A DNA stretch of 64,000 nucleotides from assembly GCA_950097015.1 (NCBI GenBank), contig CATNEN010000024.1, positions 4,712,001 to 4,776,000 on the forward strand. The letters are read 5' to 3'. Every line of letters starts with the position of its first letter. Positions within the stretch are counted from its first letter, which is position 1. Below the pieces are notes generated by a model. It worked only from the letters and a program-made list of their open reading frames with translations, was not told the DNA's origin and did not search any database. This document shows positions 20,934-26,600 of this stretch, piece after piece. Position numbers and translations under genes: made by a program. This DNA is from Macrostomum hystrix (Eukaryota; Animalia; Platyhelminthes).

Positions 20934-22696
20934 GAGAATGAAAAAATTATAGTTAGTCGATTAATATAATGCCGGACATCGAACATAGTAACATCGAAAA
21001 GCCTATAAATATTGATTGGCGGGGAATGCCTTTTGGTGCATCGTTGACGAAACAATTTTTTATAGTCTTTGTTTTTGCAAACTTTCATTTGTCTTCTGCG
21101 ACCACAATTCATGCCCAACATTTCTGTGTTTAATAAATAAGAAACACACGCTCTCGCTTTACCTTTTGTGTCTTCCAAACGGGAACGACAATACAAAAAG
21201 ATGGCAGGGAAAAAGCACAAACGCGACTTTGAAAGTGAAAATTTCAATTTCATATAGATATCAATGGACACGAACAATGTTAAAAGTTTGAAACAGACAT
21301 ATTTGAGATGAAGTAAAATCGATAGAAAAGCAAAGAAACTGCATAAAATTGCAGCCATTCTTACTTCATGCGTTCGTTTTAAAATGATCCCAATTTGATC
21401 CAAAATTGCCGTGTGTTTAGTTGGTATATTTTGCTGAATTCGCGAAATACAATTACATGAATTCACAATCACAACAAACTGACGGCAACTAAAAGATTAT
21501 GCTAAACCAAGTATGAATTTATGAGCAGTGAATAGCTCTACAGAAACAATCACTATTCGTGTTCTTTATATAAAATATTTTTCATTGGCAAAGATATGGA
21601 CGCGAAGCGGCTGTTAAACATGAGCGATGAGAGTAAAGAGAAAAACTACCAAAAATGAGCTAATAAACTGCACGGATTTGAGGCCACTGCAACCTATCAT
21701 AAATAACATGTTTGCAAGATCAAGAAGATAAGGACAGGAAACTGTTTTGTCCACAGGATAACGAGCAAGAACTGATTAGAAACATGTAGAACTTTTATTT
21801 GACAGAAGTCTTAAAAATCTTACTAGTCAGTAATAATGAACTGTTGCTATTTTTAGAAAAAAGTTTTGGGACGCAATCACGTGACGAGCGTCAGCCAATG
21901 AAATAAAAAAACGGTATTTTACCCCAATTGAAAGTTGTTTCAATTTTGTTGAAAAGAGAGAAAGAGGATGAGCTGATTTCGATAATTTTAAGATTAAAGC
22001 ATTAGATTATTCTTGGCACAAAAATTCTAATCGTCAGCCATGAAAAAATTATGTGAAAATTAAAAGCTTGAAAAAACAGCAAACGCAGCTTAGTAGATGA
22101 CAAACTAGAGAGAGCACTTGATATTCAGCTATAAGCGAGCCGTGACTAGCTAAGGATGCGGCGATATTGGCTCACAATAAATCAAATTAGGCACAAGCGA
22201 AAGAATCAGTACTGTACAGATTGGGCGGTCTAGCTATAAAGTACAATCTAGCTAATAATCTATTGGATTTGCTAGACGGGGTAGGGGAAATGCCAACTTT
22301 AGCGATACAAGTAAAGTACATTAGTTAGACCATCGAGTTAAATCAATAATTGAGCTAGTGGTTTGTTGAAAATCATATAGAAGCATTTTTGGATGGAAAA
22401 TCTAATTCTCACTTAATCGTTAGCTCGCGCCTTTGGTGAACTCAACTATAGCCAAGATTGAATTTTAAAAAATCACTGGAGTCTGATGTGATTGAAATGA
22501 AGCGTTACAACCGTGGACATACTGAACAATGCTAAGTTCTATTTCAACTGGCTCTATACAAAGTCTATTGATGTTGGAGAACATCAAGTGTATTGACCAA
22601 CGGAGCTCACATCACATGCCGTATTCTAATAATACATGCAGTTGAGTCCTTTAATGATTAGTGCTCAGTAGATCGCAGAGCTCAATTCGGCCACTG

Positions 22697-23593
22697 CTAG
22701 GTGCGCGGCCGCACGGAATTGTAGTGCTCACCGGAGCGCATCAGGTGCCGATGAAAGGTCACTGTCAGAGCGGCCTCTTCGCCGCCGTCGTCAACAAATT
22801 CTTCGCCAACGAGAAGGTCCGGGGGGCCGGCCTGCAGGACACGAATCGGCAGTCGGAGGGCCTCGCTGAGTGCCCGCAGCTCCATCTGGCCGCCCCATTC
22901 AGACGAAGACTCGACCAGATCAGCATAGGCCTCGAGTTCGACGCCTTCGTCTAGGAAGGGCGCGTAGTGGCCGGGACTGGCCCGAATGGCTTCAGCGGCC
23001 AGCCGGCGCAGTCCGGAAACAGATTCGTGCCGGCCGCGCCGCTGTCCGAGCTGGTGCTGCACAGCGGCGTACAGGCAGCTTCCATCGGCCGGGACCTCCT
23101 GCAAATCGAGGCCCAGTGAGGCCAGGCGCTCGCGAATGCGAGCCAATTCAACGGCGCCTTCGCTGGGCCGTTCAGCTTCGTCGATAGCTCGACGCTCCGC
23201 CTCCTGGCGTTGCCTGGCTGCGGCTTCTGCTTTCTTCTCGCGTCGCTTGGCAGCTTTGGACTTCTTCTGATGCTGCTGCTGCGGCAGCGCGTCAGATTCC
23301 TCGTCAGATTTGCCCGCGGCGTCATCCTCAGCTTCGGGCTCAATCGTCGTTTCCTCGCTCTTCTTCTTTTCGGCATTGTCGCCCAGACGCAGACAGCCGG
23401 CGCGGAGTTCGGCCGCCTCCACAGCCTGGCGCTCGTCAAGCTCGGCCTGGAAGCGGGCAGACTCGGCCTGCACCTCTCTGGCGCGCCGTTTGTCACCCTT
23501 CGGCACGGTCTTTTTTAATCGCTGAAGCTCGGCCTGCAGAGCCTTCTGCTCCAGCTTGTGCCTGGCTAGCAGCTCCTCCTCCTCCGGCAGAGA
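22697..23593 (-). CDS. OTUD6B: OTU-domain deubiquitinase OTUD6B-like; single coding exon, initiator Met not found in the genomic sequence
   Basis: N-terminal EEELLARHKLEQKALQ...KKTVPKGDKRR matches the OTUD6 family. OTU catalytic motifs VPADGSCLYAAVQHQL, WGGQMELRALS and HYNSV. The frame opens after the acceptor ctcttcag (minus strand, exon starts 23593); there is an in-frame stop at 23621-23623 and no in-frame ATG. Confidence 0.88.
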   Translation of the reverse strand, partial: SLPEEEELLARHKLEQKALQAELQRLKKTVPKGDKRRAREVQAESARFQAELDERQAVEAAELRAGCLRLGDNAEKKKSEETTIEPEAEDDAAGKSDEESDALPQQQHQKKSKAAKRREKKAEAAARQRQEAERRAIDEAERPSEGAVELARIRERLASLGLDLQEVPADGSCLYAAVQHQLGQRRGRHESVSGLRRLAAEAIRASPGHYAPFLDEGVELEAYADLVESSSEWGGQMELRALSEALRLPIRVLQAGPPDLLVGEEFVDDGGEEAALTVTFHRHLMRSGEHYNSVRPRT

Positions 23594-23612
23594 CTGAAGA
23601 GTCACGCAAAAA
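23594..23612 (-). promoter_or_regulatory. 3' splice acceptor opening the OTUD6B ORF (candidate SL trans-splice site)
   Basis: Minus-strand tttttgcgtgactcttcag is followed by TCT CTG CCG GAG in the OTUD6B frame. Confidence 0.6.
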
Positions 23613-23658
23613 TTACATGCTCAATAGCTACTACAAGTAGAATTTTTCTAATAGAACT

Positions 23659-23967
23659 TAATAATAATAATAATTGATTACACCTGCCCCAACTGGGTCA
23701 GATGTGCAGCCGACAGCACAGCCGCAGCTAATGCGTGGCGCATCTGAAGGCAGCGTACAGCTGTTCAGTCCATGGTCTGGGGAGATGCCACACCCACCTT
23801 CAATTATCCCAGCTGATGCTGGTACCCATTTAACAGCTGGGTGAACTGAAGCAATGCAGAGCTAAGCGTCTTGCTAAAGGACACACATTTTTTCAGTGGA
23901 GTCGGGAATCGAACCCCCGACCTTCAAGCCGTGAGTTCGACGCCCTAACCGCTAGGCTACAACCTCC
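23659..23967 (-). mobile_element. tRNA-derived SINE, family 1, apparently full length
   Basis: Minus strand: tRNA-like head with A box TAGCCTAGCGG and B box GGTTCGATTCC; a central block GCAAGACGCTTAGC...CAGTTCACCCAGCTGTTAAATGGG reminiscent of the CORE domain; a 3' body shared with other copies; an (ATT)n tail. Confidence 0.85.
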
Positions 23968-24189
23968 TTAAATAACCACATTTTATAAATAGAACTTGCT
24001 ATATACGAGCGTATTTATAAAATGTGAGCAATTCCTCACTATGCTGCCCTTAACCGCAGATAATATATTTTACTATCCTCTGATGAAGAATATACAGAAC
24101 ATAGAACATATCAGGGGTTAGTAGTAAATAAATATCGTATCCGTGCCCTTAACTAAAGCACGAGGGATGTTCGGGAAATAATGTTGCTT

Positions 24190-24510
24190 TTAGTTGTTGT
24201 GGACGGTTGGCAAGTCGCAATGTGCTATGCACTTTTGGTGACATTAGAACGGACGTAGGATGCGCGTTGAGCGAGAAGGCAATCCTGCCCACTTCGTTGA
24301 ACACACAGATACTGTACGCACGCACACGCTCACGCAGGTGTGTACACCTGTCTTGACTTTATCATCGTCAAGCCTTGGAGGTTGGCCCTCAAGGGCGCAA
24401 ATTGCACGACAAGCCCCCAAGCCTTCTCTCCGCGGCTGCGCCCCAATTGAATGTGGCCTCGCCGCGGAATCGAGCTCAGGGGCATTGCTGCGAGAGGCAA
24501 ACGCGTTAAA
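24190..24510 (-). mobile_element. tRNA-derived SINE, family 2, second copy between RPS23 and OTUD6B
   Basis: Shares actttatcatcgtca, aagggcg.aaattgcacgacaagccc, aatgtggcctc.ccgcggaatcgagctca and ggcaaacgcgttaa with the 29041-29330 copy. Confidence 0.7.
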
Positions 24511-24913
24511 GTTAGTGTATAGCCGATCTCTCTACTTACGAGATACAGGCATCTTTTGAAAAACACATCCAAATCGATCGCAGTTTGTCATTTCAAAAAA
24601 GAGACTTTCCACTTTCAAAGGGCACAAAACTTGTGCCAATGCGACAGACCAAAAGTCTGCAACAAGAGAAAGTAACAAGCTACTTTCCGGACTACCCTAG
24701 TATTTACGCGTAGATCGAAATATTTTAAAGGCAGGTTATAACTCAACCAGCTCAGATTTTTAAGGAACTCCCTTTAATCACGATGGACTTATAAGTATAC
24801 CAGTCTACCTATCTGTTCACACCTAAAAATATATATATAAAAAACTGAAGACAAAGTGTCAAAAGACTTTGATCCAGAACAGAAGCCGACATCAAAAGGC
24901 CTGCAAAGTTTCA

Positions 24914-24977
24914 TTTATTCTTTATTAGCACAGAATCAAACAGCCCCGGATCCAATAGCCAGCAAGAACTGTTTATT
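24914..24977 (-). promoter_or_regulatory. RPS23 polyadenylation signals (3x AATAAA)
   Basis: TTTATT on the + strand at 24972-24977, 24921-24926 and 24914-24919, downstream of the RPS23 stop. Confidence 0.6.
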
Positions 24978-24993
24978 CATCAAGAATTATCTC

Positions 24994-25425
24994 TCAGCTT
25001 CTCGGCCTCTCCTTCTTGCCGCGGAACAGCGCCCACAGCGACACGTTGGCCACCTTGACAATCTTAAATCGGACACCGGGGATGTCGCCGACGGCGTGAC
25101 CGGCCCGACCGAAGCCGGAAACCAGGACTTCGTCGTTCTCCTCGATGAAGTTCAAGCAGCCGTCGTTGGGCACAAAGGCTGTGATCTTTTTGCCGTTTTT
25201 AATCAGTTGGACGCGAACGCACTTGCGGATGGCGCTGTTAGGCTGCTTGGCTTCGACTCCGATCTTCTCAACTACGATGCCTTTGGCGTGCGACGCGCCA
25301 CCGAAAGGATTGGCCTTCCAGCGCGTGCCCAGATGCGACTTCTTGTAGTCTTTGTCTGCCCAGCGCTGCTCGCGCCTGTGATTGCGCAGCTTGCGAGCGG
25401 TGCGAATACCAGCCGGCTTGCCCAT
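24994..25425 (-). CDS. RPS23: 40S ribosomal protein S23 (uS12), 143 aa, uninterrupted CDS
   Basis: Full-length [24 protein letters not shown]...[43 protein letters not shown]...KKERPRS. An acceptor-like cattgcag lies 5 nt upstream of the ATG, and there are three AATAAA downstream. Confidence 0.97.
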
Positions 25426-25499
25426 TGCTGCTGCAATGCGGGGTGCGTTGGCTTCTTGATTAGAACTTTGACTTAGGCTTAAGATTTCAAACAGAGCCG

Positions 25500-26600
25500 T
25501 AGGCTATAGCTGCAACCATGGACCATAGCCTATTGTTGCAACCATGGACCATAGCCTATTGTTGCAACCATGGACCATAGCCTATTGTTGCAACCATGGA
25601 CCATAGCCTATTGTTGCAACCATGGACCATAGCCTATTGTTGCAACCATGAACCATAGCCTATTGTTGCAACAGTGAACCATAGACTATTGTTGCGACAG
25701 TGAACCATAGGCTATTGTTGCAACCATGAACCATAGACTATTGTTGCAACCATGGACCATAGCCTATTGTTGCAACCATGGACCATAGCCTATTGTTGCA
25801 ACCATGGACCATAGCCTATTGTTGCAACCATGGACCATAGCCTATTGTTGCAACAGTGAACCATAGCCTATTGTTGCGACAGTGAACCATAGACTATTGC
25901 TGCAACAGTGAACCATAGACTATTGCTGCGACCATGGACCATAGACTATTGCTGCAACAGTGAACCATAGACTATTGCTGCAACAGTGAACCATAGACTA
26001 TTGCTGCGACCATGAACCATAGACTATTGCTGCAACAGTGAACCATAGACTATTGCTGCAACAGTGAACCATAGACTATTGCTGCAACCATGGACCATAG
26101 ACCATTGTTGCAATAGTGAACCATAGACTATTGTTGAAACAGTGAACCATAGACTATTGTTGCAACAGTGAACCATAGACTATTGTTGCAACAGTGAACC
26201 ATAGACTATTGCTGCAACTATGAACCATAGACTATTGTTGCAACCATGAACCATAGACTATTGCTGCAACAGTGAACCATAGACTATTGCTGCAACCATG
26301 AACCATAGGCTATTGTTGCAACCATGAACCATAGACTATTGCTGCAACAGTGAACCATAGACTATTGCTGCAACAGTGAACCATAGACTATTGCTGCAAC
26401 AGTGAACCATAGACTATTGCTGCAACAGTGAACCATAGACTATTGCTGCAACCATGAACCATAGGCTATTGTTGCAACCATGAACCATAGACTATTGCTG
26501 CAACAGTAAACCATAGACTATTGCTGCAACAGTGAACCATAGACTATTGTTTCAACAGTGAACCATAGACTATTGCTGCAACCATGAACCATAGGCCATA
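25500..26600. repeat. 26-bp minisatellite upstream of the RPS23 CDS, about 42 units
   Basis: Unit gcaaccatggaccatagcctattgtt grading into gcaacagtgaaccatagactattgct. Confidence 0.97.

What the first reader, a model, noticed from the sequence alone, without database searches (positions are those of the whole stretch)
23580..23625. OTUD6B lacks a genomic start codon: second candidate for an SL-donated AUG
Seen: an intact 298-codon ORF with catalytic Cys and His begins right after ctcttcag in phase 0. There is an in-frame TGA 9 codons upstream, and the first in-frame ATG lies deep inside the OTU domain. No ATG|GT occurs between here and RPS23, and the strong donor GTAAGT at 24539 has ATGs only in phases 1 and 2. 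Established: flatworm SLs end in AUG usable as the initiator. Inference: the mRNA is SL-AUG + SLPEEEELLARHK, which restores a normal-length OTUD6 N-terminus.
Basis: partly seen in the sequence, partly recalled or inferred. Interest (0 to 1): 0.75.

Follow-up and report, generated by a model that had tools for sequence, protein, structure and literature searches.

The report
OTUD6 start codon from spliced leader
In this Macrostomum flatworm the gene for the ribosome-associated deubiquitinase OTUD6/Otu2 has no usable start codon of its own, and transcript contigs end at its splice acceptor with a short foreign 5' tag, so the AUG at the end of the trans-spliced leader most likely starts the protein, a flatworm habit known since 2006.

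Summary
A 298-codon OTU deubiquitinase ORF on the minus strand (first codon TCT at 23593-23591, stop at 22697) begins in phase 0 right after the acceptor ctcttcAG (AG = 23595-23594). An in-frame TGA lies nine codons further up. The first in-frame ATG is residue 237, downstream of the catalytic Cys.

Transcript contigs from three runs (two studies, two organisms) stop matching the genome at 23594 and carry only 23-24 more letters. Contigs of the neighbouring RPS23 end the same way, and there the extra letters are printed and match the 3' part of the published Macrostomum lignano leader, which ends in ATG. The unique sequence upstream has no RNA cover, and no cis joint reaches the acceptor.

All three M. 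lignano orthologues are annotated "partial" and start at the same codon. DNA similarity between the species begins exactly at cag|TCTC.

Two things are not shown. The tool did not print the loose letters at 23594, and translation from the leader AUG was not tested.

This is a new example of a known mechanism. Other follow-ups in this scan reached the same verdict for other genes of this genome (NF-YB, ZC3H13, TOP3A and others).

Side results: RPS23 and OTUD6 are neighbours in both species in an operon-like arrangement, and M. lignano keeps an in-frame genomic ATG 15 nt upstream of the acceptor.

The parts
22697..23593 (-). Single-exon coding sequence of an OTUD6/Otu2-type OTU deubiquitinase. 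It has 298 codons plus TAG, starts with TCT (Ser) and has no ATG of its own before residue 237.
   Evidence: Pfam OTU E 8e-23. Full-length match to yeast Otu2 chain 8c83_x (query 3-295 against chain 11-305, E 3e-21). Catalytic D/C/H are invariant in A2.
23594..23612 (-). 3' splice acceptor (tttttgcgtgactcttcAG; AG = 23595-23594), proposed site of leader addition.
   Evidence: contigs of X4, X5 and X1 match up to 23594 and then carry 23, 23 and 24 unmatched letters. Depth in bin 23540-23653 is half that of the exon; similarity to M. lignano starts at cag|TCTC.
23596..23623 (-). Outron segment with the in-frame GTG (23605-23603) and in-frame TGA (23623-23621). It is absent from the RNA contigs.
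21371..22696 (-). AT-rich sequence downstream of the stop that sits on the same RNA contigs as the ORF. It is probably a long 3' UTR. The far end comes from contig lengths only.
   Evidence: table 8: records 17 and 25 extend 817 and 1029 letters beyond 22400. GC 0.32-0.37; no convincing ORF.
24994..25425 (-). RPS23 (uS12), the upstream same-strand neighbour with its own ATG. It serves as the positive control for leader detection.
   Evidence: PF00164 E 1e-48; loose ends behind 25431 and 25425 are the reverse complement of ...GCGAAGACTCAATTTATTGCAT(G).
25426..25432 (-). RPS23 leader acceptors (ttgcAG|cAG|ca), 5 and 2 nt upstream of the RPS23 ATG. The leader AUG falls out of frame here.
23654..23995 (-). 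Dispersed repeat with a tRNA-like head (23894-23944) in the RPS23-OTUD6 spacer.
   Evidence: depth in the thousands from contigs 5-10% divergent; sub-threshold match to the tRNA/tmRNA clan, E 9e-5; no intact tRNA.
24224..24565 (.). Second dispersed repeat in the spacer.
   Evidence: depth in the thousands, contigs 8-10% divergent, many internal joints typical of a repeat family.

Best explanation
The OTUD6/Otu2 gene of this Macrostomum species is an intronless exon that begins at a 3' splice acceptor. Its pre-mRNA is trans-spliced there to the genus-wide spliced leader, which ends in ...UUGCAUG. The leader supplies the cap, the whole 5' UTR and the initiator AUG, in phase 0, so the protein is M-SLPEEEELLARHK... 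(299 residues).

The pre-mRNA may be a polycistron that starts at RPS23. The upstream outron, with its GTG and in-frame TGA, is discarded. The leader AUG sits in a weak context (U at -3, U at +4) and is probably leaky. On this mRNA it is still the only start that yields a protein with the 40S-binding N-terminal domain and the catalytic Cys.

Shown: the ORF anatomy; expression; contigs leaving the genome exactly at the acceptor; the leader sequence in these same runs; conservation of the exon boundary in M. lignano.

Inferred: that the 23-24 loose letters are the leader; that ribosomes start at its AUG.
For:: contigs X4 (2035 nt), X5 (2247 nt) and X1 (392 nt, another organism and study) match to 23594, the G of the AG, which the leader's last G would also match. 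They then carry 23, 23 and 24 unmatched letters. On RPS23 the same runs carry 21-22 unmatched letters after the G of its AG, printed as the reverse complement of GCGAAGACTCAATTTATTGCAT.

PMC8629364 gives the M. lignano leader as CGGTCTCTTACTGCGAAGACTCAATTTATTGCATG. PMC10468722 reports conserved leaders with the final ATG in M. cliftonense and M. hystrix.

depth is zero over 23595-23653 and over the unique spacer bins in all four runs, and no listed joint reaches 23594.

after the junction the first AUG in any frame is +217, out of frame. The first in-frame AUG, at codon 237, would give 62 residues without the Cys.

three M. lignano copies are annotated 'partial' and start at S/PPEEE; interspecies identity is about 93% from TCTC onward and nil upstream; the alignment to Otu2 begins at residue 11 of 307, so M+SLPEE gives a normal-length N-terminus.

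PMC12582326 and PMC9851317 cite Cheng et al. 2006: the flatworm leader AUG is used as initiator, and more than 40 S. mansoni cDNAs require it.
Against: The loose letters at 23594 were not printed (table 7 was cut), and read laying allows one call. The leader at this gene is therefore identified by position and length, not by sequence.

All runs were Logan contigs, not raw reads, and their record does not say RNA. I infer RNA from the depth profile and the leader tags.

On RPS23 the leader AUG lies 8 nt (5 nt in a variant) upstream of the gene's own ATG and out of frame. It opens a 53-codon overlapping ORF. Ribosomes must often skip the leader AUG there, which leaves its efficiency on OTUD6 open.

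An in-frame CUG is the second codon after the junction and could also start translation.
Confidence: 0.8

Rival explanations
1. A short cis-spliced 5' exon carrying an in-frame ATG, from somewhere upstream, is joined to the acceptor at 23594. The 23-24 loose letters are that exon.
For: The loose letters were not printed, so their identity is not directly known. One search lists some theoretical ATG...|GT phase-0 combinations in the spacer, for example ATG 24109 with donor GTAAAA at 24073.
Against: One search lists no joint from 23594 (five further, less supported joints were not shown). Bins 23996-24223 and 24566-24793 have depth of zero or nearly zero in all four runs. None of the candidate donors has a good consensus, and the only strong donor (24539) is out of phase. 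A unique exon should let contigs run on. Instead three assemblies from two organisms all stop after 23-24 letters, as they do on the shared leader of RPS23. The M. lignano models are also 5'-partial at the same codon.
Confidence: 0.07
2. The mRNA is trans-spliced as proposed, but translation starts at a near-cognate codon (the CUG at codon 2 after the junction) or mostly fails at the weak leader AUG. The leader AUG would then not be the functional initiator.
For:: on RPS23 the leader AUG must be bypassed by most ribosomes. The leader AUG context is weak (U at -3), read directly from the sequence. CUG lies three nucleotides after the AUG.
Against: A scanning ribosome meets the AUG first. Near-cognate starts are normally far weaker than even a poor-context AUG (general knowledge). 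Use of the leader AUG is documented in flatworms (Cheng 2006, cited in PMC9851317 and PMC12582326). The products would differ by only two residues.
Confidence: 0.08
3. The locus is a transcribed but untranslated retrocopy or pseudogene that lost its start codon.
For: The gene is intronless and has no genomic ATG.
Against: The ORF is intact over 298 codons, with the catalytic triad and the Otu2-type N-terminal domain. The M. lignano orthologues are also intronless and intact at 77% amino-acid identity, in conserved synteny with RPS23. The exon start is the best conserved part. No other OTUD6 copy was seen among the hits.
Confidence: 0.03

Closest known systems
[quoted passage not shown]
   Same: The leader ends in AUG. 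The recipient ORF begins in phase 0 at the trans-splice acceptor and has no usable AUG of its own. The protein N-terminus is completed by the leader.
   Different: This is a free-living macrostomorph, not a schistosome. The gene (OTUD6/Otu2) was not among cases I could find described. Translation was not tested here.
Macrostomum SL trans-splicing and operons (Ustyantsev and Berezikov 2021, PMC8629364; Wiberg et al. 2023, PMC10468722)
   Same: The same 35-nt leader family. Its 3' 22-23 nt were read here on RPS23. The acceptor is preceded by a pyrimidine tract. Two same-strand trans-spliced genes are separated by repeat-rich spacer.
   Different: Those papers treat the final ATG as a likely start codon in general and give no per-gene account. 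The annotation pipelines leave such genes 5'-partial (M. lignano PAA83857.1, PAA76236.1, PAA83842.1).
Yeast Otu2 / Drosophila OTUD6 / human OTUD6B, deubiquitinases of eS7 on free 40S subunits (PMC10175282, PMC11316749)
   Same: Full-length similarity: a helical N-terminal domain plus a C-terminal OTU domain with Asp/Cys/His (E 3e-21 over 293 residues).
   Different: Identity to non-flatworm homologues is only about 35-40%. Activity and substrate are untested. The central acidic/basic linker is divergent.

Membership tests
Genes whose initiator AUG is donated by the flatworm spliced leader | The organism's spliced leader ends in AUG | tested here: met
   the loose ends on RPS23 in four runs are the reverse complement of GCGAAGACTCAATTTATTGCAT, followed by a matched G. 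This is identical to the 3' end of the published leader (PMC8629364).
Genes whose initiator AUG is donated by the flatworm spliced leader | The leader is joined at the acceptor directly before the ORF | tested here: inconclusive
   three contigs leave the genome at 23594 with 23-24 further letters, the same geometry as the RPS23 leader junction. The letters themselves were not printed.
Genes whose initiator AUG is donated by the flatworm spliced leader | The leader AUG is in frame with the conserved ORF, with no stop between them | tested here: met
   AG|TCT in phase 0. The conserved protein sequence starts at that codon.
Genes whose initiator AUG is donated by the flatworm spliced leader | No genomic AUG in the mature mRNA can give a functional protein | tested here: met
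   the first AUG is at +217, out of frame. The first in-frame AUG is codon 237, after the catalytic Cys.
Genes whose initiator AUG is donated by the flatworm spliced leader | Ribosomes initiate at the leader AUG | not testable with these tools
   This needs Ribo-seq, N-terminal proteomics or a reporter.
OTUD6/Otu2 deubiquitinases | OTU domain with catalytic Asp, Cys and His | tested here: met
   PF02338 E 8e-23. D170, C173 and H290 are invariant.
OTUD6/Otu2 deubiquitinases | Helical N-terminal domain homologous to the 40S-binding domain of Otu2 | tested here: met
   the phmmer alignment covers query 3-295 against Otu2 11-305. The role of the domain is described in PMC10175282.
OTUD6/Otu2 deubiquitinases | Removes mono-ubiquitin from eS7 on free 40S | not testable with these tools
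   Biochemical assay needed.
SL-resolved operon (criterion of PMC8629364) | Adjacent same-strand genes with the downstream one trans-spliced, and a repeat-adjusted spacer under 1 kb | tested here: met
   RPS23 contigs end near 24873, and the acceptor is at 23594, a spacer of 1279 nt. About 490-680 nt of that is dispersed repeat. In M. lignano the spacer is 2584 nt, of which 2236 nt is a 19-nt tandem repeat.
SL-resolved operon (criterion of PMC8629364) | A polycistronic precursor spans both genes | tested here: inconclusive
   no contig bridges the spacer, and the unique spacer bins have zero depth. Contigs drop rare precursors, so this does not exclude one. Depths differ about 100-fold between the two genes.

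The most novel reading that the evidence does not exclude
RPS23 and OTUD6 form a conserved Macrostomum operon that pairs a 40S ribosomal protein gene with the 40S-specific deubiquitinase. The downstream cistron has handed its start codon over to the spliced leader. M. lignano would preserve the intermediate state: an in-frame genomic ATG 15 nt upstream of the acceptor (MAELQ|SPPEEE...), now in the outron. In the window species that ATG has decayed to a stop-containing outron. This would be a caught-in-the-act case of start-codon replacement by a leader AUG.
Probability: 0.3. Interest if true: 0.5.

Novelty: new member of a known kind. Interest (0 to 1): 0.3.

Why it matters
For annotation, genes like this are left "partial" or mis-started by standard pipelines. 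The three M. lignano OTUD6 copies show this. Adding the leader AUG gives the correct full-length protein.

For biology, the case is another example in a free-living flatworm of a conserved housekeeping enzyme that depends on trans-splicing for its start codon. Its expression would then be tied to leader addition.

Two comparisons could help in studying how leader AUGs are selected or skipped and how genomic start codons are lost. On RPS23 the same AUG has to be skipped. In M. lignano a genomic ATG survives in the outron.

The mechanism itself has been known since 2006, and this scan has already verified it for other genes of this genome.

Tried and rejected
(1) I tried to reach the junction letters another way. 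The search for homologous proteins was meant to find a Logan-derived protein starting MSLPEEE and then fetch its contig.

(2) I searched the window for a leader RNA gene or relic using the 23-nt leader tail with up to 3 mismatches. There were no matches.

(3) I enumerated every ATG...|GT phase-0 combination upstream. Within the spacer none has a good donor, and all lie either in RNA-silent sequence or in dispersed repeats. Upstream of RPS23 the many hits are artefacts of a 26-nt minisatellite.

(4) Initiation at GTG 23605 is rejected, because it lies upstream of where all contigs leave the genome.

(5) An intact tRNA in the spacer is rejected. ARAGORN found none and Rfam gave only a sub-threshold tRNA-clan match, so the element is a tRNA-derived repeat.

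(6) A findings search for 'OTUD6B' found nothing.

Full report
**Anatomy**

The feature lies on the minus strand. The sequence reads ...gagcATGtaatttttgcGTGactcttcAG|TCT CTG CCG GAG GAG GAG GAG CTG.... The acceptor AG is at 23595-23594 and the first codon TCT at 23593-23591. The ORF runs 298 codons to TAG at 22699-22697.

Going upstream in frame there are nine codons, one of them GTG at 23605-23603, and then TGA at 23623-23621. The nearest ATG (23618) is out of frame and is followed directly by TAA. The first in-frame ATG of the ORF is residue 237, and only two Met codons exist in all.

This includes the absence of any ATG followed by GT between here and RPS23, and the phases of the ATGs upstream of the GTAAGT at 24539.

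**What the protein is**

- Pfam gives OTU (PF02338, E 8e-23) over residues about 169-292.
- Against solved structures the best match is yeast Otu2 in its 40S complexes (8c83 chain x, E 3e-21). The alignment covers query 3-295 and chain 11-305 of 307, so both the helical N-terminal domain and the OTU domain are present.
- The catalytic Asp, Cys and His are invariant in an alignment with five homologues.
- Otu2, Drosophila OTUD6 and human OTUD6B remove mono-ubiquitin from eS7 on free 40S subunits. The N-terminal domain gives 40S specificity (PMC10175282, PMC11316749).
- A protein started at Met237 would lack that domain and the catalytic Cys. A start at or very near the acceptor is therefore required for function.

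**RNA evidence**

The look-up of sequencing runs found seven runs in two studies. None is on record as RNA. Four were laid on 22400-25800.

Three observations mark them as transcriptomes:
- The unique intergenic bins have zero or nearly zero depth.
- RPS23 is about 100 times deeper than OTUD6.
- Contigs over RPS23 end in leader sequence.

For RPS23 the contigs match up to 25431, the G of ttgcAG, and then carry 21-22 loose letters. These are printed as ATGCAATAAATTGAGTCTTCGC on the plus strand. The reverse complement is GCGAAGACTCAATTTATTGCAT, which together with the matched G is the 3' end of the published M. lignano leader CGGTCTCTTACTGCGAAGACTCAATTTATTGCATG (PMC8629364). Wiberg et al. (PMC10468722) report conserved leaders, with the final ATG as a likely start codon, in M. 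cliftonense and M. hystrix.

For OTUD6 the picture is parallel:
- X4 has a 2035-nt contig and X5 a 2247-nt contig. Both match 22400-23594 with one or two differences and have 23 further letters.
- X1, a different organism and study at about 98% identity, has a 392-nt contig that matches 23227-23594 with 24 further letters.
- Depth in bin 23540-23653 is exactly half that of the exon bins, so nothing covers 23595-23653.
- No listed joint reaches 23594.

The match ends on the G of the AG, as expected when the joined sequence ends in G.

A contig that ran into a gene-specific cis exon should continue through it. Stopping after 23-24 letters in three assemblies is what happens at a sequence shared by thousands of transcripts.

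The weakness is that table 7 was truncated and did not print these particular loose letters.

**Comparative evidence**

The closest protein in the 5.8-billion collection is M. lignano PAA83857.1 (77% identity), annotated "partial" and starting SPPEEEALLARHK. Two further M. lignano copies are also "partial" and start PPEEE.

Their loci (L001-L003) align with the window at about 93% identity from TCTC onward. There is no similarity upstream of cag. The exon boundary is therefore conserved, and the authors' SL-trimmed transcript models begin there.

The window is thus a Macrostomum species other than M. lignano. OTUD6 coding DNA is 78% identical and RPS23 87%.

In M. lignano the outron holds an in-frame ATG 15 nt upstream of the acceptor (ATG GCT GAA TTG CAG|TCT), which the window species lacks. 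It may be a remnant of an ancestral start made dispensable by the leader AUG. It may also be chance, at roughly a one-in-twelve prior (my own rough estimate, about 5 x 1/64, not a computed result).

**Mechanism**

The most likely reading is that the leader is joined at 23594 and its terminal AUG opens the frame, giving M-SLPEEEELLARHK...

After the junction the first AUG in any frame is at +217 and out of frame, so no other AUG gives a useful product.

There is one caveat. On RPS23 the leader AUG lies 8 nt (5 nt in a variant) upstream of the gene's own ATG and out of frame. It opens a 53-codon overlapping ORF in both species. RPS23's own ATG has a strong context (A or G at -3, G at +4; GCCGCCATGG in M. 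lignano), while the leader AUG has U at -3. Leaky scanning past the leader AUG must therefore be common. On OTUD6 it may be used inefficiently, which would fit a low-abundance enzyme. That last point is inference.

**Context**

RPS23 lies upstream on the same strand in the window and in all three M. lignano loci.

In the window the spacer is 1279 nt, from the RPS23 contig end near 24873 to the acceptor at 23594. It holds two dispersed repeats, one with a tRNA-like head. In M. lignano L001 the spacer is 2584 nt, of which 2236 nt is a 19-nt tandem repeat.

By the repeat-adjusted criterion of under 1 kb in PMC8629364, the pair would be classed as an operon. No bridging RNA was seen, and the depths differ about 100-fold, so this stays open.

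**Verdict**

The mechanism has been known since Cheng et al. 2006 (cited in PMC12582326 and PMC9851317). Notes from this scan report the same verdict for other genes of this genome, so this is a new member of a known kind. My confidence is 0.8 for the whole reading. I put trans-splicing at this acceptor somewhat higher.

Noticed in passing
window 25426-25432 (-), and L001 975-990: On RPS23 mRNAs the leader AUG lies 8 nt (5 nt in a variant contig) upstream of the gene's own Kozak-strong ATG and out of frame. It opens a 53-codon overlapping ORF in both the window species and M. lignano. Ribosomes must skip the leader AUG on this very abundant mRNA.
   Followed up: partly
L001 3985-4000 (same in L002, L003): All three M. 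lignano OTUD6 copies keep an in-frame ATG 15 nt upstream of the conserved acceptor (MAELQ|SPPEEE), with the frame open for at least 30 codons upstream. The window species has a TGA there instead.
   Followed up: partly
window 22697-25425 (-); L001 985-4936; L002 1526-4933; L003 900-4933: RPS23 followed by OTUD6 on the same strand is conserved between species, with spacers made mostly of repeats. This is operon-like by the criterion of PMC8629364.
   Followed up: partly
window 25500-26594: A minisatellite of 42 copies of a 26-nt unit (92% matches) lies directly upstream of the RPS23 acceptor.
   Followed up: no
window 23654-23995 and 24224-24565: Two dispersed repeats have RNA-contig depth in the thousands, from copies 5-10% divergent. 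The first has a tRNA-like head (23894-23944, tRNA/tmRNA clan, E 9e-5) and looks like a tRNA-derived SINE.
   Followed up: partly
window about 21371-22696 (-): RNA contigs that carry the OTUD6 ORF run on for 1.1-1.3 kb of AT-rich sequence past the stop codon. This is either an unusually long 3' UTR or an overlap with a convergent transcript.
   Followed up: no
window 25369 and 25426: RPS23 contigs show a second variant (C>T at 25369, and CC instead of CA before the ATG). This suggests a second RPS23 copy or allele that uses the cAG acceptor 3 nt downstream.
   Followed up: no
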